A stretch of 32,404 bases of DNA from Ranitomeya imitator (lineage: Eukaryota): the NCBI RefSeq assembly GCF_032444005.1, contig NC_091285.1, positions 7,905,597-7,938,000 of the forward strand, given 5' to 3'. The position numbers and the translations under genes were made by a program. Shown here piece by piece: positions 10,938-32,404 of this stretch (positions are counted from its first letter, which is position 1; every line of letters begins with the position of its first letter). Under the pieces are notes generated by a model. The model was not told where the DNA came from, searched no databases, and saw only the letters and a program-made list of their open reading frames with translations.

Positions 10938-12860
10938 CCCTCTCCAGACCCCTCTGTCACCTCCTCCAGACCCCTGTCCCTTCCTCTAGACCCCTCTGTC
11001 CCCTCCTCCAGACCCCTCTGTCCTCTCCTCCAGACCCTTCTGTCCCCTCCTCCAGACCCCTCTGTCCCCTCCTCTAGACCCCTCTGTCCCCTCCTCCATA
11101 CCCCTTTGTCCCTTCCTCCAGACTCCTCTGTCACCTCCTCCAGACCCCTCTGTCTCTTCCTCCAGACCCCTGTGTCCCCTCCTCCAGACCCCTGTGTCCC
11201 CTCCTCCAGACCCCTCTGTCCCTTCCTCTAGACCCCTCTGTCCCTTCCTCTAGACCCCTCTATCTCCTCCTCCAGACCCCTCTGTCCCTTCCTCTAGACC
11301 CCTCTGTCCCTTCCTCTAGACCCCTCTATCTCCTCCTCTAGACCCCTCTGTCCCCTCCTTCAGACCCATCTGTTCCTTCCTCTATTCCCCTCTGTCCCTT
11401 TCTCCAGACCCCTTTTTCCTTTCCTCTAGACCCCTCTGTCCCTTCCTCTAGACCCCTCTGTCTCCTCCTCTAGACCCCTCTGTCCCCTCCTCCAGACCCC
11501 TCTGTCCTTTCCTCCAGACCCCTCTGTCCCTTCCTCCAGACCCCTCTGTCCCTTCCTCCAGACCCCCCTTTCCTTTCCTCTAGACCCCTCTGTACCTTCC
11601 TCTAGACCCCTCTGTCTCCTCCTCCAGACCCTTCTGTCCCTTCCTCTTGACCCCTCTATCTCCTCCTCCAGACCCCTCTGTCTCCTCCTCCAGACCCCTC
11701 TGTCCCCTCCTCCAGACTCCTCTGTCCCTTCCTCCAGACCCCTCTGTCCCTTCCTCCAGACCCTTTTCCTTTCCTCTAGACCCCTCTATCCCCTCCTCCA
11801 GACCCCTCTGTCCCTTCCTCCAGACCCTTCTGTCCCTTCCTCCAGACCCCTCTATCTCCTCCTCCAGACCCTTCTGTCCCTTCCTCCAGACCCCTCTGTC
11901 CCCTCCTCTAGACCCCTCTGTCCCCTCCTCCATACCCCTTTGTCCCTTCCTCCAGACTCCTCTGTCACCTCCTCCAGACCCCTCTGTCTCTTCCTCCAGA
12001 CCCCTGTGTCCCCTCCTCCAGACCCCTGTGTCCCCTCCTCCAGACCCCTCTGTCCCTTCCTCTAGACCCCTCTGTCCCTTCCTCTAGACCCCTCTATCTC
12101 CTCCTCCAGACCCCTCTGTCCCTTCCTCTAGACCCCTCTGTCCCCTCCTCCAGACCCCTCTGTCCCTTCCTCTAGACCCCTCTGTCACTTTCTCCAGACC
12201 CCTCTTTCCTTTCCTCTAGACCCCTCTGTCCCTTCCTCTAGACCCCTCTGTCTCCTCCTCCAGACCCCTCTGTCCCCTCCTCCAGACCCCTCTGTCCCTT
12301 CCTCTAGACCCCTCTGTCCCCTCCTCCAGACCCCTCTGTTCCTTCCTCTAGACCCCTCTGTCCCTTTCTCCAGACCCCTTTTTCCTTTCCTCTAGACCCC
12401 TCTGTCCCTTCCTCTAGACCCCTCTGTCCCCTCCTCCAGACCCCTCTGTCCCCTCCTCCAGGCCCCTCTGTCCCTTCCTCCAGACCCCTCTGTCTTTTCC
12501 TCCAGACCCCTCTTTCCTTTCCTCTAGACCCCTCTGTCCCTTCCTCTAGACCCCTCTATCTCCTCCTCCAGACCCCTCTGTCCCCTCCTCTAGACCCATC
12601 TGTCCCTTCCTCCAGACCCCTCTATCTCCTCCTCCAGACCCCTTTGTCCCTTCCTCTAGACCCCTCTGTCCCCTCCTCCTGACACCTCTTTCATCTCCTC
12701 CATTCCTCTCTGTCTCCCTTCCTCCAGACCCCTCTGTCTCCTCCTCCAGACCCCTCTGTCGCCTCCTCCAGACTCATCTGTCACTTCCTCCAGACTCATC
12801 TGTCATCTCCTCCAGACCCTTCTGTCCCTTTCTCCAGACCCCTCTGTCCCCAGACTCCTA
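10938..12860 (+). repeat. 22-bp pyrimidine-rich minisatellite (CCAGACCCCTCTGTCCCCTCCT)n
   Basis: 22-bp period, degenerate toward 12670-12860. Confidence 0.96.
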
Positions 12861-12924
12861 TGTTCCATTTTTTCTCCAGATCAAGGTTTCCAAACTCCCC
12901 CCAATTTTTTTCTGGACACCTGGA

Positions 12925-13100
12925 CTTCCGTCATTATGACCATGTGAGGGCTTGTTTTTTGCGGGACGAGTTGTACTTTGAACGACACCATTGGTTTTAA
13001 CATATCGTGTACTAGAAAACGGGAAAAAAATAAAAATACGGGAAAAAAATTCAAAGTGCGGTGAAATTGCAAAAAGAAAAAGTGCAATTCCACAACTTTT
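12925..13100. mobile_element. Probable internal fragment of a frog interspersed DNA-transposon-derived repeat
   Basis: Sequence ttgttttttgcgggacgagttgtac...aagtgcggtgaaattgc resembles anuran repeats from memory only; no termini visible. Confidence 0.3.
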
Positions 13101-13449
13101 TTACCAGTCCACCAATTACTAAGCACAAAAGAATGCCCCACAATATAAACACGGAGGGCCGTGAGAATCAGGAACACCAAAACAAAAAAGTCCTCCAAGA
13201 CAAGTCATATAAAAATGTAATTTTTATTGAATCATGTTAAAACATAATTAAAAAGAGAATAATATTATACAAAAAAGGAACGAAAGGACGCGCAAACATC
13301 GGGCAGCAATATGTAACAGGTCCAAAGAGTAGTGATAAATATATAGAAAATATTGGTAACAAATCACAAAAAGTGATCAGATGAAAAGCACAATATTTAG
13401 AATAAATAGAAAAAAGAGAACATGTGTATGTGGACCCCAAATATTCTAC

Positions 13450-13914
13450 AGGACTGCCGGTATTCTAGGGGCTTATTTCAGCCGAACCCTGAAACCACAT
13501 ACATAAGACAACATTGGCACTGAACACACCACTCAGTTGATACTAGTGCATGGCCATGCAAACCTTTTATAGCTGCAGCAACTACAGGACCTTCCTAGAG
13601 GACCAATGGGAGCTACTGCAGTACCTGAGCATGTGACCCCCGACCTCCAATGAGAGGTCTTACCCTGGGCATGCTCAGAAGGGGAAAAGCAGGACTTAGT
13701 CCCAGAGACGTCTGCTCGCCGCTGACCAGTACTGGCTACAATGGCTGAGCCTGGAAAGGCAGCAGTAATCATCCACACCGTATAAGGCTGAGCTAGATGC
13801 TGGGACCGACGTCTCCACTGAGCAGGCTCCACTGCAGCTGGAGGAGAATGGGAGACCGCAGAGGAAATGGTTTGAGATTCCCCCTGTGCAGAGCTGGGAA
13901 CTCGACCCCTAACA
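13450..13914 (-). mobile_element. Truncated LTR (probably Gypsy-type), 5' end at 13914
   Basis: Minus strand starts TGTTAGGGGTCGAG at 13914 and contains TATAAAAGG (about 13573-13565). It abuts the Tc1 coding fragment exactly. Left boundary approximate; no matching CA end or TSD found. Confidence 0.6.
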
Positions 13915-14130
13915 GAAGATCAGTCAGTGCGAAAAATTGGGCAAACTTTGAAAGTGTCCCCACGTGCAGTGGCAAAAACCATCAAGCGCTACAAAAAAAC
14001 TGGCTCACATGAGGCCCGCCCCAGGAAAGGAAGACCAAGAGTCACCTCTGCTTCTGAGGATAAGTTTATCTGAGTCACCAGCCTCAGAAATCGCAGGTTA
14101 ACAGCAGCTCAGATTAGAGACCAGGTCAAT
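13915..14130 (+). pseudogene. Tc1-family transposase, N-terminal (paired-like/HTH) fragment
   Basis: Translates EDQSVRKIGQTLKVSPRAVAKTIKRYKKTGSHEARPRKGRPRVTSASEDKFI*VTSLRNRRLTAAQIRDQVN, with a GRPR motif and a premature TGA at 14071-14073. Continues in frame at 16172. Confidence 0.92.
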
Positions 14131-15103
14131 CAGAGGCGTAGCTAGAGCTTTTGCCGCCCGGGGCTGTTCCAGAGTTTGGCGCCCCCCCCCCCCCCCCCGG
14201 CTCAATACACACAAAGGTTACCAAAAACGGTTTTCCTGTTTTGTAGAACTTAAACTGGGCCTAATGGTGTCACCCCCACATGCCACACCTGTGACTTAAT
14301 ACCACCACACCATGACCAGGCCACATAGTGACCGAATAATACTACATACAAGGGACAAATACCACAACACCATTTCCAGACCACATATTACCACCACATA
14401 GTGACTGAATACTACAATACTGATCAGTAATAAAAAAAAAACACAATACTATCACCATAAGTGCCAGTATTCACAGGAGATCTGTACTTAGTATGCAGTG
14501 TCTGTGTAGAGGTAATACAGAGATCACTGGTGACATTATACACAGGACCTCTATATAGTATACAGTGTATAGTGTCAGTGTATAGGTAACACTGACTCAC
14601 CAGTGACGTCTCTAGGTGAATTCCTTCATCTTTCATCCAGCACAGACCGCCATCATTCCTTCCAGCCAGGACTCGTTTCTGCAGGAAATAACACAGTTAT
14701 CTCGAGCTCCGCTTGCAGAACACATTACTTAATTTTTCACAACTTCTACATTACATCACATGAAGAAAAAAAGGTGATATAGTGTCACTCTGCACAGTAA
14801 CAGGACCGCCCCCCCCATTTAAAACAGTATACTCAAAAAATAAAATAAATACATCACTGCAGTAATAATATCCCTTAATTAGCCCCTATGGTAATAATAT
14901 TCCCCACCCTGGCCCCGTTTCTCATTCCTGGCTCCAGCCATATGTTCTCGCATCCTGCCCTCATGAGCATCCATTCTACCCCATATGATCTCCACATCCT
15001 GCCCCACCAGCCTCCTTCGTATCCGTCCTGCCCCATGATCCAATCCTGCCCCGTGTCTCCAATCATGCCCCGTATCTACATTCTGCTCATGCCTCAAGTC
15101 CTG

Positions 15104-15750
15104 CCCCCAGTGTGTCCAGCATATTACCCCCATGTTGTCCAGCAATCTGCCCCAGTGTGTCCAGCATATTACCCCCATGTTGTCCAGCAATCTGCCCCAG
15201 TGTGTCCAGCATATTACCCCCAGTGTGTCCAGCAATCTGCCCCAGTATGTCCAGCACTGCCCCCAGTGTGTCCAGCAATCTGCCCCAGTGTCCAGCCTTT
15301 CCCCAGTGTGTCCAGCAATCTGCCCCATGGTCTCCTGTATTGCCCCAGTGTGTCCAGCATTCTGCCACATGGTCTCCTGTATTGCCCCAGTGTGTCCAGC
15401 AATCTGCCCCATGGTCTCCAGTATTGCCCCATTGTGTCCAGCAATCTGCCCCATAGTCTCCTGTATTGCCCCAGTGTGTCCAGCAATCTGCCCCATGGTC
15501 TCATGTATTGCCCCAGTGTGTCCAGCAATCTGCCCCATGGTCTCCTGTATTGCCCCAGTGTGTCCAGCAATCTGCCCCATGGTCTCCAGTATTGCCCCAG
15601 TGTGTCCAGCAATCTGCCCCATGGTCTCCTGTATTGCCCCAGTGTGTCCAGCAATCTGCCCCATGGTCTCCAGTATTGCCCCAGTGTGTCCAGCAATCTG
15701 CCCCATGGTCTCCAGTATTGCCCCAGTGTGTCCAGCATTGCCCCAGCCCC
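15104..15750 (+). repeat. 42-bp tandem repeat inside the hAT element (CCCCAGTGTGTCCAGCAATCTGCCCCATGGTCTCCTGTATTG)n
   Basis: 42-bp period from about 15300; related units of about 22/44 bp from 15104. Confidence 0.93.
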
Positions 15751-15790
15751 AGACAGTCAGACATAAAGAAAAAAAAAAAAAAGTAAAATC

Positions 15791-15972
15791 CTCACCTCTC
15801 CCGTTCCCAGCGCAGGTCCGGTGCAGTCAGCATCTCTCCGGCTCTGCGACGCTCAGGACAGAGAGGCAGAGCGGCGCGCACAGTAGTGACGTCATCGCGC
15901 CCTCTGCTCTGAGACGTCGCAGAGTCAGAGGACGCTGTAGCTGCCGGCGCCGCAGGAACCAGGAGAGGTGAG
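15791..15972. other. Imperfect palindrome of about 180 bp with a central TGACGTCA and outward-facing splice donors
   Basis: CTCACCTCTCC at 15791 and GGAGAGGTGAG ending at 15972 are reverse complements; inner arms GGCTCTGCGACG / CGTCGCAGAGTC; CRE-like palindrome at 15887-15894. Confidence 0.65.
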
Positions 15973-16163
15973 TATAGAGCGGGGGGCGGGGTCCGGTGGT
16001 GGGGGGAGCTGGCCCTGGTCGTGGCGGCGGACGGCGCCGCCCGAAGATTTAAAGGGGCGTCTTTTTTTTTTTTTTTCTTCTCCTGCAGCGCCGGCCGCCC
16101 CCCGCATTGTGCCGCCCGGGGCGGACCGCCCCCCCCCCCCGCACCCCCCTTCCTACGCCACTG

Positions 16164-17097
16164 AGGTCAATGCCACACAGAGTTCTAGCAGCAGACACAT
16201 CTCTACAACAACTGTTAAGAGGAGACTTTGTGCAGCAGGCCTTCATGGTAAAATAGCTGCTAGGAAACCACTGCTAAGGACAGGCAACAAGCAGAAGAGA
16301 CTTGTTTGGGCTAAAGAACACAAGGAATGGACATTAGACCAGTGGAAATCTGTGCTTTGGTCTGATGAGTCCAAATTTGAGATCTTTGGTTCCAACCACC
16401 GTGTCTTTGTGCGACGCAGAAAAGGTGAACGGATGGACTCTACATGCCTGGTTCCCACCGTGAAGCATGGAGGAGGAGGTGTGATGGTGTGGGGGGGCTT
16501 TGCTGGTGACACTGTTGGGGATTTATTCAAAATTGAAGGCATACTGAACCAGCATGGCTACCACAGCATCTTGCAGCGGCATGCACTTCCATCCGGTTTA
16601 CGTTTAGTTGGACCATCATTTATTTTTCAACAGGACAATGACCCCCAAACACCTCCAGGCTGTGTAAGGGCTATTTGACCAAGAAGGAGAGTGATGGGGG
16701 CTACACCAGATGACCTGGCCTCCACAGTCACCAGACCTGAACCCAATCGAGATGGTTTGGGGTGAGCTGGACTGCAGAGTGAAGGCAAAAGGGCCAACAA
16801 GTGCTAAGCATCTCTGGGAACTCCTTCAAGATTGTTGGAAGACCATTCCCGGTGACTACCTCCTGAAGCTCATCAAGAGAATGCCAAGAGTGTGCAAAGC
16901 AGTCATCAAAGCAAAAGGTGGCTACTTTGAAGAACCTAGAATATAAGACATCATTTCAGTTGTTTCACACTTTTTTGTTAAGTATATAATTCCACATGTG
17001 TTAATTCATAGTTTTGATGCCTTCAGTGTGAATGTACAATTTTCATAGTCATAAAAATACAGAAAAATCTTTAAATGAAAAGGTGTGTCCAAACTTT
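16164..17097 (+). pseudogene. Tc1 DD34E transposase, catalytic part plus truncated 3' end
   Basis: WSDESKFEIFG, TVKHGGG, FQQDND and WPPQSPDLNPIE motifs; a frameshift near 16645 splits ORFs 15968-16678 and 16710-16946; stop at 16944-16946. The 3' end stops at GTGTGTCCAAACTTT and runs into (TA)n without the terminal bases. Confidence 0.95.
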
Positions 17098-17601
17098 ATA
17101 TATATATATACAGGAGCTGCAGGGAGCGGAGCCGCCGCCTGTGTCCCCCCATACACTGTACACACTGGATATATATATATACAGGAGCTGCAGGGAGCGG
17201 AGCCGCCGCCTGTGTCCCCCCATACACTGTACACACTGGATATATATATATATATATATATACAGGAGCTGCAGGGAGCGGAGCCGCCGCCTGTGTCCCC
17301 CATACACTGTACACACTGGATATATATATATATATATATATACAGGAGCTGCAGGGAGCGGAGCCGCCGCCTGTGTACCCCCATACACTGTACACACTGG
17401 ATATATATATATATACAGGAGCTGCAGGGAGCGGAGCCGCCGCCTGTGTCCCCCCATACACTGTACACACTGGATATATATATATATATATATACAGGAG
17501 CTGCAGGGAGCGGAGCCGCCGCCTGTGTCCCCCCATACACTGTACACATTGGATATATATATATACAGGACAGGAGCCGCCGCCTGTGTCCCCCCATACA
17601 C

Positions 17602-17664
<63 letters not shown>

Positions 17665-17929
17665 GACAGGAGCTGCAGGGAGCGGAGCCCCCCCCCCTCT
17701 GTACCCCCATACACTGTACACACTGGATATATATATATATATACAGGAGCTGCAGGGAGCGGAGCCGCCGCCTGTGTCCCCCCATACACTGTACACACTG
17801 GATATATATATATACAGGACAGGAGCCGCCACCTGTGTCCCCCCATACACTGTACACACTGGATATATATATATATATATATACAGGAGCTGCAGGGAGT
17901 GGAGCCGCCGCCTGTGTCCCCCCATACAC

Positions 17930-17976
<47 letters not shown>

Positions 17977-18373
17977 GACAGGAGCTGCAGGGAGCGGAGC
18001 CCCCCCCCCTCTGTACCCCCATACACTGTACACACTGGATATATATATATATACAGGAGCTGCAGGGAGCGGAGCCGCCGCCTGTGTCCCCCCATACACT
18101 GTACACACTGGATATATATATATATATACAGGAGCTGCAGGGAGCGGAGCCGCCGCCTGTGTCCCCCCATACAGTGTACACACTGGATATATATATATAC
18201 AGGACAGGAGCCGCCGCCTGTGTCCCCCCATACACTGTACACACTGGATATATATATATATATACAGGACAGGAGCCGCCGCCTGTGTCCCCCCATACAC
18301 TGTACACACTGGATATATATATATATACAGGAGCTGCAGGGAGTGGAGCCGCCGCCTGTGTCCCCCCATACAC

Positions 18374-18420
<47 letters not shown>

Positions 18421-18557
18421 GACAGGAGCTGCAGGGAGCGGAGCCCCCCCCCCTCTGTACCCCCATACACTGTACACACTGGATATATATATATATACAG
18501 GAGCTGCAGGGAGTGGAGCCGCCGCCTGTGTCCCCCCATACACTGTACACACTGGAT

Positions 18558-18627
<70 letters not shown>

Positions 18628-18743
18628 GAGCTGCAGGGAGTGGAGCCGCCGCCTGTGTCCCCCCATACACTGTACACACTGGATATATATATATATACAG
18701 GACAGGAGCCGCCGCCTGTGTCCCCCCATACACTGTACACACT

Positions 18744-18795
<52 letters not shown>

Positions 18796-19201
18796 GAGCT
18801 GCAGGGAGCGGAGCCGCCGCCTGTGTCCCCCCATACACTGTACACACTGGATATATATATATACAGGAGCTGCAGGGAGCGGAGCCGCCGCCTGTGTCCC
18901 CCCATACACTGTACACACTGGATATATATATATACAGGAGCTGCAGGGAGCGGAGCCGCCGCCTGTGTCCTCCCATACACTGTACACACTGGATATATAT
19001 ATATATACAGGAGCTGCAGGGAGCGGAGCCGCCGCCTGTGTCCCCCCATACACTGTACACACTGGATATATATATATATATACAGGAGCTGCAGGGAGCG
19101 GAGCCGCCGCCTGTGTCCCCCCATACACTGTACACACTGGATATATATATATATACAGGACAGGAGCCGCCGCCTGTGTCCCCCCATACACTGTACACAC
19201 T

Positions 19202-19267
<66 letters not shown>

Positions 19268-19467
19268 GAGCTGCAGGGAGCGGAGCCGCCGCCTGTGTCC
19301 CCCATACACTGTACACACTGGATATATATATATACAGGACAGGAGCTGCAGGGAGCGGAGGCCGCCGCCTGTGTCCCCCCATACACTGTACACACTGGAT
19401 ATATATATATACAGGAGCTGCAGGGAGCGGAGCCGCCGCCTGTGTCCCCTCATACACTGTACACACT

Positions 19468-19501
<34 letters not shown>

Positions 19502-19553
19502 GAGCTGCAGGGAGCGGAGCCGCCGCCTGTGTCCCCCATACACTGTACACACT

Positions 19554-19591
<38 letters not shown>

Positions 19592-19643
19592 GAGCTGCAG
19601 GGAGCGGAGCCGCCGCCTGTGTCCCCCATACACTGTACACACT

Positions 19644-19681
<38 letters not shown>

Positions 19682-19733
19682 GAGCTGCAGGGAGCGGAGC
19701 CGCCGCCTGTGTCCCCCATACACTGTACACACT

Positions 19734-19775
<42 letters not shown>

Positions 19776-20035
19776 GACAGGAGCTGCAGGGAGCGGAGGC
19801 CGCCGCCTGTGTCCCCCCATAGACTGTACACACTGGATATATATATATACAGGACAGGAGCTGCAGGGAGCGGAGCCCCCCCCTCTGTACCCCCATACAC
19901 TGTACACACTGGATATATATATATATACAGGAGCTGCAGGGAGCGGAGCCGCCGCCTGTGTCCCCCCATAGACTGTACACACTGGATATATATATATACA
20001 GGACAGGAGCTGCAGGGAGCGGAGGCCGCCGCCTG
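17098..20035 (+). repeat. Composite minisatellite: 59-bp GC-rich core plus variable (TA)n, 36 full units and one partial
   Basis: Core CAGGAGCTGCAGGGAGCGGAGCCGCCGCCTGTGTCCCCCCATACACTGTACACACTGGA followed by TA runs of variable length; units counted by eye. Confidence 0.97.
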
Positions 20036-20414
20036 TGCCTCCTTCCGGCCTCTCAGCAGATCCCCGTCCTCCTCCCATCGTACAATCCGCTTCCTGCCCG
20101 GTACAGATTGTGGTACAGATCCCTGCGGTGGTGACCGGTGCCGGGAATAGAAGGACGAGCTCCCGCAGCAGCTTTATCTCCGGAGACACCCGGTGATGAG
20201 CAGCCCGGGAGGACTATGGGGAGATCCCGGGCCTCCTCCCGGCTCCTTCCTGCCTCCTCCGCCAGTGACGGCTACAGACATGTAGGGAAGATGTCAGGGA
20301 GGAGGCGGACACCGAGACAGCGCGCTCTGCTGTCCGGTCCTGGCCGGTAATGGGCGATCATCCCGGGCAGGGAAGCACAAGGGGAGAGCGGAGCTTCCCT
20401 CGGCTCAGACAGGT

Positions 20415-20572: not shown

Positions 20573-21226
20573 ATGGCAGAGACCGCGCCAGCCGCCGCTT
20601 CTCCTCCCGCTGAACCGGCCGCCAAATCCAAGAAGCAGCCGAAGAAAACCGCCGCAGGGGGCGCCAAGAAGAGCAAGAAACCTTCTGGTCCCAGCGTGTC
20701 CGAGCTGATCGTCAAGGCCGTGTCCGCCTCCAAAGAGCGCAGCGGGGTGTCCCTGGCCGCCCTGAAGAAGGCTCTGTCTGCAGGAGGGTACGATGTGGAG
20801 AAGAACAACAGCCGCCTGAAGCTGGCCGTCCGGGGTCTGGTCACCAAGGGCGCCCTCCTCCAGGTGAAGGGCAGCGGCGCCTCCGGCTCATTCAGGCTGA
20901 ACAAGAAGCAGGAGACCAAGGACAAAGTGGCCAAGAAGAAGCCGGCGGCTGCGGCCAAACCCAAGAAACCCGCTGCTGCCAAGAAAGCCGCCAAATCTCC
21001 GAAGAAGCCCAAGAAGGCTCCGACCGCGGCCAAGAAGAGCCCGAAAAAGGCCAAGAAGCCCGCAGCAGCTGCGGCCAAAAAAGCCAAGAGCCCCAAGAAG
21101 CCGAAGGCCGCTCCCAAGCCCAAGAAGGTGACGAAGAGTCCGGCTAAGAAGGTGGCGAAACCCAAAGCTGCCAAGAGTCCGGCTAAGAAGGCGGCTAAAG
21201 CCAAGAAGCCCGCGGCTAAGAAATAA
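20573..21226 (+). CDS. H1: Linker histone H1, replication-dependent type (217 aa)
   Basis: [10 protein letters not shown]-terminus, globular domain [28 protein letters not shown]...[13 protein letters not shown] tail with SPKK motifs; intronless; true ATG at 20573. Confidence 0.97.
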
Positions 21227-21255: not shown

Positions 21256-21296
21256 GGCTCTTATCAGAGCCACCACCTCCTCCCCGCAGAGCTGTA
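21256..21296 (+). terminator. H1 3' stem-loop and HDE
   Basis: GGCTCT-TATC-AGAGCC 21256-21271, then ACCAC; GCAGAGCTGT 21286-21295. Confidence 0.92.
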
Positions 21297-21376
21297 TGAT
21301 CAGTGCCACCACCTCCTCCCCGCAGAGCTGTATGATCAGTGCCACCACCTCCTCCCCGCAGAGCTGTATGATCAGT
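21269..21376 (+). repeat. Exact triplication of a 36-bp segment holding the H1 cleavage site and HDE
   Basis: GCCACCACCTCCTCCCCGCAGAGCTGTATGATCAGT at 21269, 21305 and 21341. Confidence 0.97.
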
Positions 21377-21624: not shown

Positions 21625-22194
<570 letters not shown>

Positions 22195-22221: not shown

Positions 22222-22263
22222 GGCTCTTTTCAGAGCCACCAAATCCTCCCACAGACGAGCTGA
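22222..22263 (+). terminator. H3 3' stem-loop and HDE
   Basis: Canonical GGCTCT-TTTC-AGAGCC 22222-22237 followed by ACCA; GACGAGCTGA 22254-22263. Confidence 0.93.
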
Positions 22264-23036
22264 GTCCTGAACAGTCCGTCTTCTGCGCGTATTCCCTGTA
22301 TACGGAGCGCAGTGATCCGTTATAGGCGGCGACTGCCGTGTCCGATATTTTAGGTGACGAGCGACATACAGTGATCGCTGCGCACATTCTCTGTTCTCAC
22401 CCATCGGTGATTGATTGTTTTTTTTCCCCCCCATTGTTTCGCGGTAATTTACTGATCCGTTGGTGGATTTGAATTTCCCACTCAGTCGCTTCTCGCGCTC
22501 CGGATGATCAGAACCGATCACAATCTGCTGGGTCCTAGTGCCGCCCGCTGTATTGCGGCTTTAAGTTCTGATCGGTGATCTCTGCGCTTATAATCTTATT
22601 TCCCCCCAGATCGGTGCTGGCCTCTTCCTCCCCTTTCTACTAAGTATTATTATGTCTTGAGTGAATCTATTGTGCCTGACACTGATCGGAGCAGATCCCT
22701 CCCTGTGCCCTGCTATGGGTCGCTACAGGTCACATTTGTGGTGGGAGGATCGTTATGTAATTATCGTATATTTGAGTTTTCCATCTTCTCCGGGGCTGGA
22801 GCCGCCCGGGCACTGGTTGCCTGCAGCTCCCTGCGTTGTAGTGACCTGTAATGGCCGCCGAGCACTGAGTGCAGTGACTGCCGGGGATCAGATGAGTCTT
22901 GTGCTGATTTAATTCTACTCTCTAACATTTGACAGAAGCTGGAAAATCGCAACAGAAACAACAATGAAGGGAAAACCCCAAGTTACTAACATCGAGATGA
23001 GAAGAATAGAGAAGCGGGGAAATAACAGCACAATAA

Positions 23037-23531
<495 letters not shown>

Positions 23532-23557: not shown

Positions 23558-23599
23558 GGCTCTTATCAGAGCCGCCCACATCTTCTAAGAAAAAGCCGT
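23558..23599 (+). terminator. H4 3' stem-loop and HDE
   Basis: GGCTCT-TATC-AGAGCC 23558-23573; purine tract AAGAAAAAGCCGT at about 23587-23599. Confidence 0.88.
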
Positions 23600-24834
23600 G
23601 ACCTCGAATATGAGCCATCAGCGGCTGAAGCAGAAGGGCGTCCGGATATACAGCGGTATATGGGGGCAACTACGGATGGGATATAGACCGAGCTATATAC
23701 ATTCCAGCCCTGGACACTTACTGCTCTATACCGCTATATCCCAGTATGCAGCACTATATGGGGGTACAAAGAGCTGTTTACAAGGACACGTTTCTATATA
23801 GAGGTATTTATTTCTACATGGAAGGTTTACAGCTGTATTTGGGGATTACAGGGAATATACAGCGCTATATGGGGGTGGAGTCCGACTGCTCACAGGAAAT
23901 GTCCCTCATTACTGTCTGATACTCCGCTGTAGTTAGCACGTCCCGGAGTATCGGGGGGACGGCGGCCTCTCCCGGAGGACGATCCCGTGTGCGGCGGATC
24001 AGGAGGGCAGGACTCCGCGCTGTAATCTCCACCGACCACTCAGGTCTCAGGTTATTTGGAGAATCATGTTATACCAGATGACTGAGACCCCAGAATATCA
24101 GATCTGGGGAGCAAAGGGTTAAATCCAGGCGCCACTGATCCCAGCGACTCGCTGAGAACTGACCCGATCAGTAGTGAAGGCTCCGAGCTGTGGAGGAGCT
24201 CAGCCCCGGATCTCACCATCACCCTCCTCAGCGTTCAGCCTTCACCTCTATTGCGCCACCTGCTGTTTGTCCCGTCTCTAGAGACCCGGGCTGCGCAGCC
24301 GCAGACACGGCGGGATCACTGGAGCGGACACGGGAGCATGGACGTCGGTCGGTGTCGGGTCGGACGATCCGCTCTTGTATCCTGATCCCTCACTGGATCC
24401 CTGATTAGTGGCGCAGGATCCGCAGAACATGGACATAGCGGGAGCCGGTACACGGACTGATCGGTGGCCGCATCATCCTCGCAGGTGATTTGTGGCTTCG
24501 GACATTCCCGCTCCGTTACTGACGGTTCTCACCAGTTGTTTCTGGTTGGGGAAATGTCGCAGCGATCAGTCCTGGGCTCTGAACATACAATCTGGTCAGC
24601 TGTGAGAGAGGGATCCGGGTGAGGAGCACAGGGGAGAGGCCGAGACCCGATCACTGCTCCTCTGCTTCTTGCAATATGCGGCGTCCTCCGATCACATGCG
24701 ACAGTGAGAAGATCAGTGAGAGAATCGCACCGACCCGATAGCAATAAAGTCACAACCGACAGCAAAGTTATCAGGTAGATCACAGGATCTACTGAGGTAA
24801 AAGCTCCTATATGGAAGAATGCAGCACTAAACGG

Positions 24835-25295
24835 GGGTATACATCACTATACACGGGTAAAAACGGTACATGGGGGATTCCAGCGCTATATGGAGGGTGT
24901 GCAGTACAACATGGTGTTTGTAGCGCTATAAGGGGAGTATATAGCACATATGGACGGAGGGTTTACAGCGCTATATGCGATACACAGCATTATGTGTAAG
25001 GTATACAGCGCAATATGAGGGTATACATTGCTATATGGGCATACACCGCAGTATACGGGGGTAAGCAGCAGTATATGGGGGTTTACAGTACAATATGAGG
25101 GTATACATTGCTATATGGGCATACACCGCAGTATATGGGGGTTTACAGCACAATATGAGGGTATACATTGCTATATGGGCATACACCGCAGTATATGGGG
25201 GTTTACAGCACAATATGAGGGTATACATTGCTATATGGGCATACACCGCAGTATACGGGGTAAGCAGCAGTATATGGGGGTTATAGCACAATCTG
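24835..25295 (+). repeat. 20-bp-based repeat with 60-bp higher-order units upstream of H2B
   Basis: CAATATGAGG recurs at 25011, 25091, 25151 and 25211 (80, 60, 60 bp apart); 20-bp sub-units like GTATACAGCGCAATATGAGG; degenerate 5' part. Confidence 0.85.
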
Positions 25296-25378
25296 GGGGC
25301 GCGGTCCATGGGGAGGAGATCATTTATGGAATATCCAATGAACTGCCGAGGGCGGAGCTTCTGATGTTGATCACCTGA

Positions 25379-25885
<507 letters not shown>

Positions 25886-25914
25886 NNNNNCCGTGCTCCG
25901 CTCCTCACCCCAAA

Positions 25915-25930
25915 GGCTCTTCTAAGAGCC
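25915..25930 (+). terminator. H2B 3' stem-loop
   Basis: CCCCAAA-GGCTCT-TCTA-AGAGCC-ACCCA. Assignment to H2B assumes the N-run is correctly sized. Confidence 0.88.
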
Positions 25931-27890
25931 ACCCACACCCTCACTATAAGAGCCCCCCGCACCCTCACTATAAGAGCCCCCCGCACCCTCACTATAAGAG
26001 CCCCCCGCACCCTCACTATAAGAGCCGCCCGCACCCTCACTATAAGAGCCGCCCACACCCTCACTATAAGAGCCGCCCACACCCTCACTATAAGAGCCGC
26101 CCACACCCTCACTATAAGAGCCCCCGCACCCTCACTATAAGAGCCCCCCGCACCCTCACTATAAGAGCCCCCGCACCCTCACTATAAGAGCCGCCCACAC
26201 CCTCACTATAAGAGCCCCCCGCACCCTCACTATAAGAGCCCCCCGCACCCTCACTATAAGAGCCCCCGCACCCTCACTATAAGAGCCCCCCCGCACCCTC
26301 ATTATAAGAGCCCCCCGCACCCTCATTATAAGAGCCCCCCGCACCCTCACTATAAGAGCCCCCCGCACCCTCACTATAAGAGCCCCCCGCACCCTCACTA
26401 TAAGAGCCCCCCGCACCCTCACTATAAGAGGCCCCCGCACCCTCACTATAAGAGCCCCCCGCACCCTCACTATAAGAGCCCCCCACACCCTCACTATAAG
26501 AGCCCCCACACCCTCACTATAAGAGGCCCCCGCACCCTCACTATAAGAGCCCCCACACCCTCACTATAAGAGGCCCCCGCACCCTCACTATAAGAGCCCC
26601 CCGCACCCTCACTATAAGAGCCGCCCGCACCCTCACTATAAGAGCCCCCGCACCATCACTATAAGAGCCCCCCGCACCCTCATTATAAGAGCCCCCCGCA
26701 CCCTCACTATAAGAGCCCCCCGCACCCTCACTATAAGAGCCCCCCGCACCCTCACTATAAGAGCCCCCCGCACCCTCACTATAAGAGCCCCCCGCACCCT
26801 CACTATAAGAGCCCCCCGCACCCTCACTATAAGAGCCCCCCCGCACCCTCACTATAAGAGCCCCCCGCACCCTCACTATAAGAGCCCCCGCACCCTCACT
26901 ATAAGAGCCCCCCGCACCCTCACTATAAGAGCCCCCCGCACCCTCACTATAAGAGCCCCCACACCCTCACTATAAGAGGCCCCCGCACCCTCACTATAAG
27001 AGCCCCCCGCACCCTCACTATAAGAGGCCCCCGCACCCTCACTATAAGAGCCCCCCGCACCCTCACTATAAGAGCCGCCCGCACCCTCACTATAAGAGCC
27101 CCCGCACCATCACTATAAGAGCCCCCCGCACCCTCATTATAAGAGCCCCCCGCACCCTCACTATAAGAGCCCCCCGCACCCTCACTATAAGAGCCCCCCG
27201 CACCCTCATTATAAGAGCCCCCCGCACCCTCACTATAAGAGCCCCCCGCACCCTCACTATAAGAGCCCCCCGCACCCTCACTATAAGAGCCCCCCGCACC
27301 CTCATTATAAGAGCCCCCCGCACCCTCACTATAAGAGCCCCCCCGCACCCTCACTATAAGAGCCCCCCCGCACCCTCACTATAAGAGCCCCCCCGCACCC
27401 TCACTATAAGAGCCCCCCGCACCCTCACTATAAGAGCCCCCGCACCCTCACTATAAGAGCCCCCCGCACCCTCACTATAAGAGCCCCCCACACCCTCACT
27501 ATAAGAGCCCCCACACCCTCACTATAAGAGGCCCCCGCACCCTCACTATAAGAGCCCCCCACACCCTCACTATAAGAGCCGCCCGCACCCTCACTATAAG
27601 AGCCCCCCACACCCTCACTATAAGAGCCGCCCGCAGCCTCACTATAAGAGCCCCCGCACCATCACTATAAGAGCCCCCCGCACCCTCATTATAAGAGCCC
27701 CCCGCACCCTCACTATAAGAGCCCCCCGCACCCTCATTATAAGAGCCCCCCGCACCCTCACTATAAGAGCCCCCCGCACCCTCACTATAAGAGCCCCCCG
27801 CACCCTCACTATAAGAGCCCCCCGCACCCTCATTATAAGAGCCCCCCGCACCCTCACTATAAGAGCCCCCCGCACCCTCACTATAAGAGC
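25923..27890 (+). repeat. 24-bp tandem array (TAAGAGCCCCCCGCACCCTCACTA)n, about 80 copies, starting inside the H2B stem-loop
   Basis: The first unit is the loop/3' arm of the hairpin; the array ends in AAGAGCTG at 27885-27892. Confidence 0.97.
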
Positions 27891-28183
27891 TGCGGCTGCT
27901 CCGGTGTCCTCTCCCGTCTCCCCGAGGTGTCTGCTCGCACCGCCCGGGGCTCTGCGTCTGGTGATGAGGGAGATGGTGAGAACCTTGTCAGGAATAATCC
28001 GGGCATTTCTCAGTGAGTTGCTGGGTATTCAGTGACTTCTCTTATTTAACCCCTTGCTGCACAGATCTCGGCATTCTGGGGTCTCGTTTCCCCGATAACA
28101 GGAGCCGTTTGTGGTCGGTGGAGTTGATCTAGAAACTAATCCGGATTATTTTTACAGTGTAAGTGACGTCATTACATTTAGAA

Positions 28184-28313
28184 GCGCAGGAAATTCACCC
28201 CCCCCCCCAACCGTCCTGAGTTCAGCCAATCAGCAGAGGGAGGGAGGAGCTAATGTTGCCAATGGTAATACGTTTACAGTTCCCGCTTTTTTCCGTCCTT
28301 TGTCTTCATATAA
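28184..28313 (+). promoter_or_regulatory. Orphan, degenerate copy of the H4 promoter with no H4 CDS
   Basis: Colinear matches to 23037-23173: TCAGCCAATCAG, AGGGAGGAGCTA, GGnAATACGT, GTTCnCGCT, CTTC-ATATAA. Confidence 0.6.
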
Positions 28314-28353
28314 CACGTGGTCCCAGGACGGATATCGGATTCTGCTTGTGTTT

Positions 28354-28680
28354 TGCGAGAGTGTTAGAGGGGAGGCCACAGAGCAGGAGGTTGCAGTAGT
28401 CCCGGCGGGAGATGATGAGGTCATGGACTAGGGGTTTTGCAGATTCTTGGTTTAGGAATGTACGGATCCGTGAAATATTGAGTTGAAGGCAGTGGGAAGT
28501 GAGAAGGGCTTGGATATGTGGTTTGAAGGGAAGATCAGTGTCAAGGATTACCCCGAGACAGCGGGCTTGTGGGACTGGGGAGAGTGGGCAGCCATTTACT
28601 GTCATGGATAGGATCGTTGGGGGAAAGAATGAATTCTGTTTTGTTCACTTGTAGAAGCTCCGAGAATGAGGAGGGGAATA
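28354..28680 (-). mobile_element. L2 (CR1-clade) LINE ORF2 C-terminal fragment
   Basis: Minus-strand peptide KTEF...SPVPQARCLGVILDTDLPFKPHIQ...ISRIRTFLNQESAKPLVHDLIISRRDYCNLLLCGLP is typical of the post-RT region of L2; truncated at both ends. Confidence 0.85.
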
Positions 28681-29717
28681 ACGAATCATGGGAGAAATAT
28701 CCCAATATAATGGCAGGATAGGATCCTCTAGCAGCAGGTGTAATAATGTATAAGGAATGTCATAGATCTCATAGGGTTAATATGAGGTGAGATAAAACCA
28801 CCGCAGTGCAGAGATCTCCGATCACAATGACTGTAAGATCCCCGAGCACTGGTGCCTCCATCACAGCACAAATGCGGTCTCTTCATATTGATCTATAAAA
28901 TAAATATAACACGGATTTCCAGGGGAGCGGGCTGTACAGTAATATTCTCCTGATCAGATCCGTGTGGGGTGAATAGGGCAGCGAATATTCCCAGGGAATG
29001 TGGCGTATGAGGCAGCTGGCTAGACGGACGCCCTGTGCACCGGGTACGGAGACTCCTGTGTGATGACCTCGTCCTGGACACTAATGTTTCGGATGGATGG
29101 CGCCTCTGAAGGTTGTTATAACCTCCCAGGATGTAATAATGGCGGCCGATCGCCGTGTTTGGGGGCAGACAGCTGGGAGGACCCGGTATTATCCAGCAGA
29201 GGGGCCGGTAATATCCGACGGACAAAGACCAGAAATTGAGCGGGAAATTCAAAACCACCAACGGATCTGTAATCAGCCAATGAGCGAGAGAGATCCGCAG
29301 GCGCCGACCAATCCCAGATACAGGAATATCCGCCTCCATTAACTCCTCAGTGTCCGTGTGTGCTGATCCCCCACTACACACTCGCTGTACAGAAGCGGCG
29401 ACTTCCCCACCCGGGACCGGCAGCGTCACATCAGGCTCCGGGCAGAACATAGGATCAGCGCGGACACCGCAGGGAATCAGCACCGGATAATAAGCGGTGA
29501 GTGCGGAGCCTCCGCCTGTGCAGATGGAGGGAGGAGAAGCGCTGACAGGGATTAACCCCTCACCCGCCAGACTGTCAGTGCAATTTATGGCTGATAGAAG
29601 ACACAAGTCCAACAAGTGCAAACTACAAATGAAGAGAATATTTCTGCATTTCCTTCTGCTCCAGGACAAATATCTGTTTTCACCCCTTATCTAGTCTGTT
29701 CAAAACAAACGTTTTCT

Positions 29718-29861
29718 ATTGGGTGAGAAACTCATTTGAGCAAGGAGCATAATAAGCTCCGCCCTCTGCAGCTCATTGGTGGTTCCTCAAGACTCTTCCC
29801 CATTGGCAGCTTCAGATCCGTCCAACCACAGGAGAGGAGGCGGAGCAGCGGACTATATAAA
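29718..29861 (+). promoter_or_regulatory. H2A promoter: three inverted CCAAT boxes and TATA
   Basis: ATTGG 29718, 29775 and 29802; TATATAAA 29854-29861. Confidence 0.82.
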
Positions 29862-29905: not shown

Positions 29906-30313
<408 letters not shown>

Positions 30314-30342: not shown

Positions 30343-30384
30343 GGCTCTTCTCAGAGCCCCCCACACCGTCACCACAAGAGCCGG
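30343..30384 (+). terminator. H2A 3' stem-loop and HDE
   Basis: GGCTCT-TCTC-AGAGCC 30343-30358; AAGAGCCGG 30376-30384. Confidence 0.9.
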
Positions 30385-30842
30385 CGCCGCCTATCTCAGG
30401 GTCCTCACATGAGGCTGATGGTTCATACACCATTGCCGCCACCAGTTCATATGTTGGTGCACATATCCTCAGAATAACAGGAGATGAAAGGGTCAATCCC
30501 ACATGGAGTCTCAGATCCTCAGTGTCGTCTGCAGAGCTCGCAGGAAATGTCCCCTCATTACTGTCTGATGCTCCGCAGTGAGGTCTACATGTAGTTAGTG
30601 TTGGGGGGACGGCGGCCGCTATCAGTGACCGGTAACAATCCTCCGGGGATTATGAGCGGGGAATTCAAATTCCCCAACGGATTCTGTGATCAGACAATGA
30701 GCGAGAAACCTCGGTAACGCTCAGCCTTCAGTGACGTACATAGACGTCTTTTCTCTCACGTTTAACTCCTTACTTGCCGTTTTCCAGCTGATCTTTTCTT
30801 TACCAGAGTATCCACAGATGCGGCAGCTTCACCCCCAGGCCC

Positions 30843-31569: not shown

Positions 31570-31678
31570 TGAGAGAGAGACTGACGAAGAGAGAGAAAGA
31601 AAGGAAGGGAGAAAGATTTACAGAAAGAAAGGAGAGAGCGAAAGAATGAAAGAGAGGAGAAAAATAGAGAGAGAGACT
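31570..31678 (+). repeat. GA-rich polypurine low-complexity tract
   Basis: gagagagaga...gaaagaaagg...agagagagag. Confidence 0.8.
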
Positions 31679-32404
31679 GCTCTATATACTGTACACACTG
31701 TTCTATATACTGTACACTGCTCTATATACTGTACACTGCTCTATATACTGTACACACTGCTGTATATACTGTACACTGCTCTATATACTGTACACACTGC
31801 TCTATATACTGTACACACTGTTCTATATACTGTACACTGCTCTATATACTGTACACTGCTCTATATACTGTACACACTGCTGTATATACTGTACACTGCT
31901 CTATATACTGTACACTGCTCTATATACTGTACACACTGCTCTATATACTGTACACTGCTCTATATACTGTACACTGCTCTATATACTGTACACACTGCTC
32001 TATATACTGTACACTGCTCTATATACTGTACATTCTGCTGTATATACTGTACACACTGCTCTATATACTGTACACTGCTCTATATACTGTACACTGCTCT
32101 ATATACTGTACACTCTGCTCTATATACTGTACACACTGCTGTATATACTGTACATTCTGCTGTATATACTGTACACACTGCTCTATATACTGTACACTGC
32201 TCTATATACTGTACACTGCTCTATATACTGTACACTCTGCTCTATATACTGTACACACTGCTCTATATACTGTACATTCTGCTGTATATACTGTACACAC
32301 TGCTCTATATACTGTACACTGCTCTATATACTGTACACTGCTCTATATACTGTACACACTGCTGTATATACTGTACACAGTGCTCTATATACTGTACACT
32401 GCTC
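31679..32404 (+). repeat. 19/21-bp tandem repeat (CTCTATATACTGTACA[CA]CTG)n running off the window
   Basis: Alternating 19- and 21-bp units read directly. Confidence 0.97.

What the first reader, a model, noticed from the sequence alone, without database searches (positions are those of the whole stretch)
25915..27892. About 80-copy expansion of the H2B 3'-processing signal displaces the consensus U7 site by about 2 kb
Seen: the array starts inside the hairpin (TAAGAGCC-ACCCAC-ACCCTCACTA), repeats at 24 bp, and ends in AAGAGCTG (27885-27892), the best HDE match. Known: processing needs SLBP on the hairpin and U7 (CAGCUCUU) pairing about 15 nt downstream. Inference: AGAGCC of the stem arm and AAGAGC of the HDE form a natural 24-bp direct repeat that slipped. 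The hairpin now faces a weaker AAGAGCCC (6 rather than 8 bp of pairing), and read-through RNA would carry about 80 partial U7 sites whose AGAGCC could also compete for the 5' arm of the stem. This may weaken processing, titrate U7 snRNP, or act as a length-variable regulator.
Basis: partly seen in the sequence, partly recalled or inferred. Interest (0 to 1): 0.85.

Follow-up and report, generated by a model that had tools for sequence, protein, structure and literature searches.

The report
Minisatellite grown from histone H2B 3' signal
In a poison-frog histone gene cluster, the short stretch that tells the cell where to cut the H2B messenger RNA has been copied head-to-tail 82 times; the gene still has a complete cutting signal at the front of the array, so this is most likely a tolerated by-product of an unusually repeat-prone locus.

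Summary
A 24-bp array (25923-27890; 82 full units plus a terminal TAAGAGC; 95% matches) starts in the loop and 3' arm of the H2B hairpin (25915-25930) and ends in AAGAGCTG (27885-27892).

The window is a Ranitomeya imitator cluster, H1-H3-H4-H2B-H2A, all on the + strand.

A 7-bp direct repeat, TAAGAGC, occurs in the hairpin and again in the downstream U7 site 24 bp away, and it brackets the array exactly. Unit 1 is unique and keeps ACCCA. The single-copy H2A 3' end matches hairpin plus unit 1 at 37 of 46 positions with the same 24-bp register. No 24-mer lies elsewhere in the window. Three blocks of about 20 units show later growth by unequal exchange. The H1 gene carries an independent 3 x 36-bp duplication that also starts in its hairpin. 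A Xenopus tropicalis cluster has eight hairpins and no such arrays.

The functional claims are not supported. The first unit supplies a U7 site in the correct register, with predicted pairing (-10.2 kcal/mol) between that of H3 (-10.5) and H2A (-8.0). The native hairpin stays the minimum-energy fold. Read-through, U7 titration and length polymorphism could not be tested. Interest is moderate to low.

The parts
25335..25441 (+). H2B promoter elements: CCAAT 25335-25339, TGACGTCA 25405-25412, octamer ATTTGCAT 25419-25426, TATAAAT 25435-25441
   Evidence: Read directly. Their assignment as promoter elements rests on general knowledge of H2B promoters and was not tested.
25508..25885 (+). H2B coding sequence (125 aa gene call). 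25606-25890 are masked N and were left untouched.
   Evidence: Gene call with a Pfam Histone hit in the source assembly, mapped by offset to the window. The N-terminal 32 residues are readable.
25915..25930 (+). H2B 3' hairpin (SLBP site): stem GGCTCT, loop TCTA, stem AGAGCC, preceded by CCAAA
   Evidence: Rfam Histone3 34.4 bits, gathering score 34, E 1.8e-06; regex hit.
25931..25935 (+). ACCCA cleavage context, kept only in unit 1
   Evidence: Unit 1 (variant K) is the only unit with ACCCACA.
25943..25954 (+). Proximal HDE-like U7 site ACTATAAGAGCC (end of unit 1, start of unit 2), the presumed working site
   Evidence: RNAduplex with U7 nt 8-20 gives -10.2 kcal/mol, starting 13 nt after the stem. 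The GAGC register is 24, the same as in H3 and H2A.
25923..27890 (+). 24-bp minisatellite: 82 units plus terminal TAAGAGC, 13 variants, 48% C on the + strand
26473..26949 (+). Higher-order block 1 (units 24-43), containing the variant run G-H-C-H-C-A-E-J-B
   Evidence: Variant string.
26950..27477 (+). Higher-order block 2 (units 44-65), containing H-C-A-C-A-E-J-B
   Evidence: Variant string.
27478..27883 (+). Higher-order block 3 (units 66-82), containing G-H-C-G-E-G-M-J-B
   Evidence: Variant string.
27880..27893 (+). Distal, presumably ancestral HDE ACTATAAGAGCTGC, now about 1.95 kb from the hairpin
   Evidence: Best U7 duplex among the sites compared, -14.5 kcal/mol (core) and -17.6 (20 nt).
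28899..28904 (+). Only AATAAA/ATTAAA between the H2B hairpin and H2A
   Evidence: Regex scan.
21256..21271 (+). H1 3' hairpin
   Evidence: Rfam Histone3 29.8 bits, E 3.1e-05.
21263..21376 (+). Second, independent case: 36-bp x 3 tandem duplication starting in the loop/3' arm of the H1 hairpin, each copy carrying CAGAGCTG, bracketed by ATCAG microhomology
   Evidence: TRF period 36, 3.2 copies, 98% matches; three copies at 98-100% identity (family D4); sequence.
30343..30382 (+). H2A hairpin, spacer and AAGAGCC: the single-copy counterpart of the H2B hairpin plus unit 1, unexpanded
   Evidence: 37 of 46 identical to H2B, spacer 13 of 17; GAGC-to-GAGC period 24; Rfam 27.5 bits.

Best explanation
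This is a locus-specific minisatellite that was born from the H2B mRNA 3'-processing signal itself.

In the ancestral single-copy state, the hairpin's last loop bases and 3' arm (TAAGAGC-C) and the core of the downstream U7-binding element (TAAGAGC-TG) formed a 7-bp direct repeat 24 bp apart. That spacing is imposed by the fixed hairpin-to-U7-site distance. A slip or unequal exchange between the two copies duplicated the 24-bp interval. The array then grew to 82 units, largely by unequal exchange of blocks of about 20 units, in a locus where nearly half the DNA is minisatellite.

Each new unit begins with a copy of the 3' arm that resembles the U7-site core. The first unit therefore rebuilds a full signal: hairpin, ACCCA, 12-nt spacer and AAGAGCC in the native register. 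H2B mRNA is probably still cut normally just after the hairpin. The strong ancestral site, now 2 kb away, is out of reach. The internal units have no 5' arm, so they are not SLBP sites. The array is most likely neutral or nearly so.

Shown: the anatomy, the boundaries, the block structure, the register, and predicted pairing within the cluster's normal range. Inferred: the order of events, and continued normal processing.
For: Boundaries:
- The array runs 25923-27890 and is bracketed by TAAGAGC at both ends.
- Unit 1 is the only unit with ACCCACA.
- Units with the ancestral-like CACACCC state lie at units 1, 6-8 and 12 near the 5' edge and recur within the three higher-order blocks.

The unit is histone 3' flank and is not a foreign satellite:
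- The H2A 3' end matches 37 of 46 positions, with the same 24-bp GAGC-to-GAGC period. H3 shares that period.
- No copy of the 24-mer lies elsewhere in the window.
- The unit has no similarity above shuffled controls to the other 10 array units.

Growth by block exchange:
- Three blocks of 17-22 units share an ordered variant run ending in the J-B variant pair.

Signal retained:
- Rfam Histone3 scores hairpin plus unit 1 at 34.4 bits, second best of the five genes.
- U7 core duplex energies in kcal/mol: H1 -12.6, H3 -10.5, H2B proximal -10.2, H2A -8.0, H4 -5.9.
- U7 cleaves at a fixed distance from its pairing site (PMC7026596).
- The native hairpin remains the minimum-energy fold with up to 60 units.
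- The gene has an annotated 125-aa histone product and readable promoter motifs.

Same process elsewhere:
- H1 has a 3 x 36-bp duplication starting in its hairpin.
- 16 arrays cover 47.7% of the window.
- A Xenopus tropicalis cluster has 8 hairpins and none carries an array.
Against: - No RNA data, so normal processing is inferred and not shown.
- The U7 sequence used is the human 5' end (PMC12360213), taken as a proxy for the frog's.
- Duplex energies of this size are not rare: 9% of random 40-nt windows reach -10 kcal/mol. Position, more than energy, carries the argument.
- H2A has an equally slippable 6-bp repeat at the same spacing and has not expanded. The direct repeat is therefore permissive and does not by itself cause expansion.
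- Equilibrium folding suggests downstream arms could take the 5' arm in about a third of naked read-through molecules.
- TAAGAG and the preceding TA are invariant in all 82 units. This could hint at constraint, or simply that mutation concentrates in the C-run and the CpG.
- Genome-wide absence of the 24-mer could not be checked.
Confidence: 0.65

Rival explanations
1. The array is functional. Nascent or read-through RNA carrying dozens of hairpin-less HDE-like sites binds U7 snRNP, and its AGAGCC arms compete for the hairpin's 5' arm. Processing of this H2B would be weakened, U7 titrated or concentrated locally, and H2B output would depend on array length.
For: - 82 sites each pair with the U7 core at about -10.2 kcal/mol.
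- In mammalian extracts U7 snRNP can bind, and even cleave, substrates without SLBP when pairing is strong (PMC5435866).
- The native hairpin's equilibrium probability drops to about 0.65 with 10 or more units.
- TATAAGAG is invariant across all units.
- The only AATAAA is about 1 kb beyond the array, so any misprocessed transcript would carry the whole array.
Against: - There is no evidence of read-through.
- The proximal site is in the normal register and energy range, so efficient cleavage is expected and would cut transcripts before most of the array.
- Without SLBP, binding is weak, and it is weaker still for a 6+3-bp duplex.
- The locus is full of unrelated minisatellites with no obvious function, so a neutral origin is the economical reading.
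- The invariance can be explained by mutation concentrating in the C-run and CpG.
Confidence: 0.12
2. The trigger was the hairpin palindrome itself and not the TAAGAGC direct repeat. The 16-bp inverted repeat stalls replication or forms a hairpin in single-stranded DNA, which promotes template switching just 3' of its centre. The direct repeat only fixed the junction.
For: - Both arrays (H2B and H1) have their left junction in the loop/3' arm.
- The H1 event used ATCAG microhomology and a 36-bp unit, not the AGAGC repeat.
- H2A and H3 have the same 24-bp GAGC repeat but no array.
- The chance of a second array start inside one of the other four hairpins is about 0.03.
Against: - There are only two cases, found in one post-hoc inspected window.
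- A 6-bp stem is a weak replication barrier.
- Eight hairpins in the Xenopus cluster show no arrays.
- This rival is not exclusive with the main explanation.
Confidence: 0.15
3. The 24-mer is a dispersed satellite of this genome that happens to abut the H2B 3' end, or it spread from elsewhere and converted the flank.
For: - The genome is very repeat-rich, and 47.7% of this window is tandem arrays.
- The rest of the genome could not be searched because no assembly DNA was available.
Against: - The array edges coincide to the base with the functional hairpin arm and the HDE core.
- Unit 1 is the functional flank.
- The independent H2A flank resembles the unit at 37 of 46 positions.
- There are no copies elsewhere in the window, and no relation to neighbouring arrays.
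Confidence: 0.07
4. The array, or its length, is an assembly artefact.
For: - Tandem arrays are error-prone in assemblies.
- Reads could not be inspected.
Against: - Thirteen unit variants in an ordered, non-periodic pattern with three diverged blocks are not what a mis-joined or looped assembly graph gives.
- Two kilobases is, from general knowledge, well within a long read, and the assembly is a Vertebrate Genomes Project one.
- A paralogous cluster in an older R. imitator assembly, GCA_958301615.1, also has a long H2B-to-H2A interval: 3648 bp end to end, against 4428 here. This is a proxy only.
Confidence: 0.05

Closest known systems
Canonical replication-dependent histone mRNA 3' processing signal (SLBP hairpin, cleavage after ACCCA, U7-binding histone downstream element)
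   Same: Hairpin plus unit 1 has every sequence feature: a 6-bp stem, a 4-nt loop with U at positions 1 and 3, the CCAAA and ACCCA flanks, and a purine core complementary to U7 CUCUUU in the same register as H3 and H2A of this cluster.
   Different: The downstream element is reiterated 82 times, and the strongest copy lies 2 kb away. No report of a tandemly repeated HDE was found in the searched literature.
GC-rich minisatellites (10-100 bp units with interspersed variant repeats, growing by slippage and unequal exchange)
   Same: The unit is 24 bp, with 13 interspersed variants, higher-order blocks, strong strand asymmetry (48% C) and neighbouring unrelated minisatellites.
   Different: The seed sequence can be identified and is a functional RNA-processing signal. 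The array keeps one working copy at its 5' edge.
Newt (Notophthalmus) histone clusters embedded in satellite DNA, with read-through transcription on lampbrush chromosomes (from my own knowledge of Stephenson, Diaz and Gall, 1981). One search retrieved only the abstract of a paper on the genome-wide satellite 2 (PMC2114352), whose reference list cites Gall et al. 1981 on histone genes at newt sphere loci.
   Same: It is an amphibian histone cluster with tandem repeats directly downstream of histone genes. Failure of 3' processing would send polymerase into the repeats.
   Different: The newt satellites have roughly 220-330-bp units unrelated to the processing signal and span tens of kilobases. 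Here the repeat derives from the signal, spans 2 kb, and transcription is untested.
Engineered insertions between hairpin and HDE (mH2a+4, mH2a+12; Scharl and Steitz; PMC7026596)
   Same: These address the same question: what happens when the HDE is moved away from the hairpin. Cleavage follows the HDE at a fixed distance.
   Different: In the frog the natural 'insertion' brings its own HDE-like copy in the correct register, so no shift of the cleavage site is expected.

Membership tests
Histone mRNA 3' processing signal | 16-nt hairpin (6-bp stem, 4-nt loop with U at loop positions 1 and 3) with A-rich 5' flank | tested here: met
   25910-25954 scores 34.4 bits on Rfam RF00032, gathering score 34. 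The sequence is CCAAA GGCTCT TCTA AGAGCC.
Histone mRNA 3' processing signal | ACCCA-type cleavage context directly 3' of the stem | tested here: met
   ACCCA at 25931-35, present in unit 1 only.
Histone mRNA 3' processing signal | Purine-rich downstream element complementary to the U7 5' region at the fixed distance | tested here: met
   ACTATAAGAGCC starts 13 nt after the stem and gives -10.2 kcal/mol with U7 nt 8-20. The register is identical to H3 and H2A. The U7 sequence is a human proxy.
Histone mRNA 3' processing signal | Actual SLBP/U7-dependent cleavage producing a non-polyadenylated mRNA | not testable with these tools
   No RNA or biochemical data were available.
Histone mRNA 3' processing signal (internal units 2-82) | A hairpin upstream of each HDE-like site | tested here: not met
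   Internal units lack a 5' arm. No Rfam Histone3 hit lies inside the array even at E up to 1.
Minisatellite | Head-to-tail array of 10-100 bp units | tested here: met
   Period 24, 82.3 copies, 95% matches.
Minisatellite | Interspersed variant units or higher-order structure indicating unequal exchange | tested here: met
   13 variants; three blocks of 17-22 units share an ordered variant run.
Minisatellite | Length polymorphism between alleles or individuals | not testable with these tools
   Only a proxy exists: a paralogous cluster in another assembly has an H2B-to-H2A interval 780 bp shorter.
Dispersed satellite family | The same unit at many unrelated loci | tested here: inconclusive
   None elsewhere in the 32-kb window, no relation to the other arrays, none in metagenome contigs. 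The frog genome itself could not be searched.
Newt-type histone/satellite read-through unit | Transcripts that run from a histone gene into the repeats | not testable with these tools
   No transcript data.

The most novel reading that the evidence does not exclude
The array is a natural tandem U7 landing pad. RNA made from the first units, or from the whole array when processing fails, carries many hairpin-less HDE-like sites. These sites recruit U7 snRNP. The result could be a local U7 reservoir at the histone locus body, a fail-safe cleavage and termination zone, or a sponge that lowers processing, so that H2B output or 3'-end choice scales with copy number. The invariance of TATAAGAG in all 82 units would then reflect selection.
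Probability: 0.1. Interest if true: 0.7.

Novelty: new member of a known kind. Interest (0 to 1): 0.35.

Why it matters
It is a clean case in which the seed of a minisatellite can be read off the sequence. The fixed spacing that U7 imposes between the hairpin and the downstream element, plus the built-in resemblance of the hairpin's 3' arm to that element, creates a short direct repeat at histone 3' ends: four of the five genes here have one. That repeat can expand.

For histone mRNA biology it offers a natural allelic series (1 site, 3 sites at H1, 82 at H2B). This series could test how extra U7 sites, a slightly weaker proximal site and competing stem arms affect processing and termination.

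For annotation, it is a warning. Long open frames run through such arrays, so gene models there need care.

If the array proves neutral, as I expect, the interest is mainly evolutionary and local.

Tried and rejected
- **DNA of other cluster copies and other frogs.** Exact-protein look-ups for H1 and H2A of the window, and for H1 relatives from R. imitator (older assembly), R. variabilis and Phyllobates terribilis, returned gene positions only ('file too large'). Whether other H2B copies carry the array therefore stayed untested. Only the Xenopus tropicalis locus came with DNA.
- **Metagenome scan for the 24-mer.** No matches. This says nothing about the frog genome.
- **Relation of the 24-mer to the other ten array units in the window.** No alignment scored above the shuffled controls. 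An eye-catching CCCCCGCA shared with the 32-mer is only 8 bases.
- **The repeat finder for inverted repeats around H2B.** Nothing at seed 11 and minimum length 40. A blastn with word size 7 then found an 88-bp inverted pair.
- **Pfam on three open frames near H2B.** Two lie between the array and H2A, one lies upstream of H2B. No families, so my impression that 28306-28605 (-) looks like a retroelement tail is unconfirmed.
- **Bacterial-type promoter and terminator scan.** Uninformative for a frog locus.
- **Xenopus U7 paper (PMC46907).** Not held. I used the human U7 5' end as a proxy.
- **Species table in PMC12822217.** It is scrambled in the held text.
- **Masked bases.** I did not read or fill the masked H2B bases from any source. 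In the Xenopus locus only hairpins and their downstream flanks were printed.
Full report
**Source and layout**

The H1 and H2A proteins encoded in the window occur at one place each, on a 725.8-Mb chromosome of assembly GCA_032444005.1. Two papers identify that assembly as Ranitomeya imitator, aRanImi1.pri, from the Vertebrate Genomes Project.

ORFs and hairpin scans give a histone cluster with all genes on the + strand:

| Gene | Coding sequence | 3' hairpin |
|---|---|---|
| H1 | 20573-21226 | 21256-21271 |
| H3 | 21784-22194 | 22222-22237 |
| H4 | 23220-23531 | 23558-23573 |
| H2B | 25508-25885 | 25915-25930 |
| H2A | 29927-30313 | 30343-30358 |

- All five hairpins match Rfam Histone3, at 27.5 to 35.4 bits. 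H2B scores 34.4, second best.
- Another cluster copy follows about 5 kb after H2A.
- Bases 25606-25890 of H2B are masked. I left them masked and did not look them up anywhere.

**The observation**

- Tandem Repeats Finder reports one array at 25923-27890: period 24, 82.3 copies, 95% matches.
- Splitting on TAAGAG gives 82 full units of 23-25 nt in 13 variants, plus a terminal TAAGAGC that continues as TG.
- The array starts at the third loop base of the H2B hairpin. Unit 1 is therefore the end of the loop, the 3' arm, ACCCA and the spacer.
- The array ends in AAGAGCTG at 27885-27892.
- The consensus has 65 matches at up to 3 mismatches, all inside the array, against none in 100 shuffles.

**Where the array came from**

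The array is bracketed by the same 7 bases, TAAGAGC. At the left they are part of the hairpin. At the right they are the core of the U7-binding downstream element (HDE). This is the footprint expected when the interval between two short direct repeats is duplicated. Four further points support a local origin.

- **Unit 1 is unique.** It alone has ACCCACA. The CACACCC state, which is also the state of the H2A and H4 flanks, occurs at units 1, 6-8 and 12 near the 5' edge and recurs within the higher-order blocks. The CGCACCC form makes up 69 of the 82 units.
- **The unit is histone 3' flank.** The H2A gene, unrelated in coding sequence, has a single-copy 3' end that matches the H2B hairpin plus unit 1 at 37 of 46 positions (13 of 17 in the spacer), and it ends in AAGAGCC.
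- **The spacing is structural.** The distance from GAGC in the 3' arm to GAGC in the downstream element is 24 in H3, H2B and H2A, and 22 in H1. It follows from the fixed hairpin-to-U7-site geometry.
- **Nothing else in the window is related.** There are no other copies of the 24-mer. Its similarity to the ten other array units is no better than shuffled controls.

Later growth was not unit-by-unit slippage alone. The variant string shows three blocks of 17-22 units, each carrying an ordered variant run that ends in the J-B variant pair (26473-26949, 26950-27477, 27478-27883). This pattern is typical of unequal exchange.

**A second case, and the context**

The H1 gene has a 36-bp unit present three times (21263-21376, 98-100% identical). 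It begins in the loop/3' arm of the H1 hairpin, each copy carries CAGAGCTG, and it is bracketed by ATCAG microhomology. That event used a different microhomology and period, so it is independent.

Sixteen arrays cover 47.7% of the window. The chance that two array starts fall inside the five hairpins is about 8e-4. Given the first, the chance of a second is about 0.03. That is suggestive, but it is post hoc and rests on two cases.

A Xenopus tropicalis cluster (L001, 20.9 kb) has eight hairpins, each with a single-copy downstream flank. Its only tandem repeats lie in H1 coding tails. The arrays are therefore derived relative to Xenopus.

**Does the gene still have a working signal?**

[quoted passage not shown] A site 2 kb away cannot direct cleavage at the hairpin. 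The proximal copy must do the work.

As a proxy for the frog U7, I used the human U7 5' end from PMC12360213. That paper calls the CUCUUU core highly conserved. Predicted duplexes with U7 nt 8-20:

| Site | ΔG (kcal/mol) |
|---|---|
| H2B distal (ancestral) | -14.5 |
| H1 | -12.6 |
| H3 | -10.5 |
| H2B proximal | -10.2 |
| H2A | -8.0 |
| H4 | -5.9 |

- The expansion cost about 4 kcal/mol relative to the ancestral site, but the gene stays in the middle of its own cluster's range.
- The proximal site's register is identical to that of H3 and H2A.
- Energies of this size are not rare: about 9% of random windows reach -10 kcal/mol. Position carries most of the weight.
- CCAAT, TGACGTCA, ATTTGCAT and TATAAAT are readable upstream.
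- The source annotation calls a 125-aa histone product.

I infer that processing is probably normal. This is not shown.

- **Competition for the 5' arm.** In naked RNA at equilibrium, the probability of the native hairpin falls from 0.998 with no units to 0.95 with two, and to about 0.65 with ten or more. The native hairpin stays the minimum-energy fold. The idea has some physical basis. Co-transcriptional folding and SLBP binding should still favour the adjacent arm.
- **U7 titration or a length-dependent regulator.** This needs array-containing RNA, for which there is no evidence. Mammalian U7 snRNP can act without SLBP only on strong duplexes, and then less efficiently (PMC5435866).
- **Read-through length.** The only AATAAA or ATTAAA before H2A is at 28899. 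A misprocessed transcript would carry the entire array.
- **Invariant core.** TAAGAG and the preceding TA are invariant in all 82 units. With roughly ten independent mutation types, the chance of missing an 8-base block is about 0.02 by my own rough count. However, the changes cluster in the C-run and a CpG, which are mutation hot spots. I treat this as inconclusive.

**Artefact and dispersal**

- The ordered, non-periodic variant pattern argues against an assembly loop.
- A paralogous cluster in the older R. imitator assembly has an H2B-to-H2A distance of 3648 bp, against 4428 here. That is compatible with a shorter array there, but it rests on gene positions only.
- Read support and genome-wide distribution of the 24-mer could not be tested, because no frog assembly other than X. 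tropicalis returned DNA.

**Comparison with what is known**

- Hairpin plus unit 1 meets all the sequence criteria of a histone 3' processing signal. Units 2-82 do not, because they lack a hairpin.
- The array meets the structural criteria of a minisatellite.
- I found no paper describing tandemly repeated downstream elements.
- The nearest biological parallel, from my own knowledge, is the newt histone cluster embedded in satellite DNA that is transcribed by read-through on lampbrush chromosomes. The one paper I retrieved here (PMC2114352) concerns the genome-wide satellite 2. Those satellites are unrelated to the processing signal.

**Verdict**

The origin hypothesis is well supported. The functional hypotheses are unsupported and, on the anatomy, less likely than near-neutrality. 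I file it as a new member of a known kind: a minisatellite with an identifiable seed in a functional RNA-processing signal.

Noticed in passing
window 21263-21376: The H1 gene has its own tandem duplication (36 bp x 3, 98-100% identical). It starts in the loop/3' arm of the H1 hairpin, so the H1 3' flank carries three CAGAGCTG U7 sites. It is bracketed by ATCAG microhomology.
   Followed up: yes
window 679-20037 and 31676-32404: Sixteen tandem arrays (units of 20-90 bp, unrelated to each other by my test) cover 47.7% of the window. The 20 kb upstream of H1 is almost continuous minisatellite. A Xenopus tropicalis histone cluster (L001) has none outside the H1 coding tails.
   Followed up: partly
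window 24084-24166 and 28000-28085; 25308-25394 and 29716-29803: An 88-bp inverted repeat (80% identity) flanks H2B plus the array. The H2A promoter region is an inverted copy (77% over 91 bp) of the H2B promoter region. In X. tropicalis H2B and H2A are divergent neighbours (L001 6054-6434 on the - strand, 6751-7143 on the + strand). This suggests that the H2B segment was inverted in the Ranitomeya lineage.
   Followed up: partly
window 28207-28252: This stretch is 85% identical over 46 bp to the CCAAT region upstream of H4 (23055-23099), with no histone gene behind it. It may be a promoter remnant.
   Followed up: no
window 29237-29289, 30653-30706, 23036-23087, 22449-22484 (-): A CCAAT-containing element of about 50 bp (85-92% identical) recurs upstream of H4 and H2A, downstream of H2A, and inverted downstream of H3. 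Its function is unknown.
   Followed up: no
window 25923-27890: TAAGAG and the preceding TA are invariant in all 82 units. All variation lies in the C-run, a CpG, and positions 7, 9, 16, 18 and 22. This could reflect constraint on the U7-like core, or only mutation hot spots.
   Followed up: partly
window 25923-27890, minus strand: The template strand of the array is G-rich and holds 35 G-quadruplex-type motifs when loops of up to 12 nt are allowed (none with loops up to 7). The transcribed RNA would be 48% C.
   Followed up: no
window 17049-20189 (both strands), 25417-27354: Open frames of more than 1000 aa (17049-20189) and of 111-239 aa (25417-27354) run through the arrays purely because of periodicity. 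In the older R. imitator assembly an H2A model of 165 aa spans 1.9 kb downstream of H2B. This may be such a miscall.
   Followed up: no
window 9-179: A second masked run of 171 N lies at the very start of the window. The readable flank gives no hint of a histone hairpin.
   Followed up: no
window 23636-23877 and 24807-25282: A degenerate 20-bp repeat family (about 60-80% identical copies) lies both downstream of H4 and upstream of H2B, on either side of a unique segment of about 900 bp.
   Followed up: no
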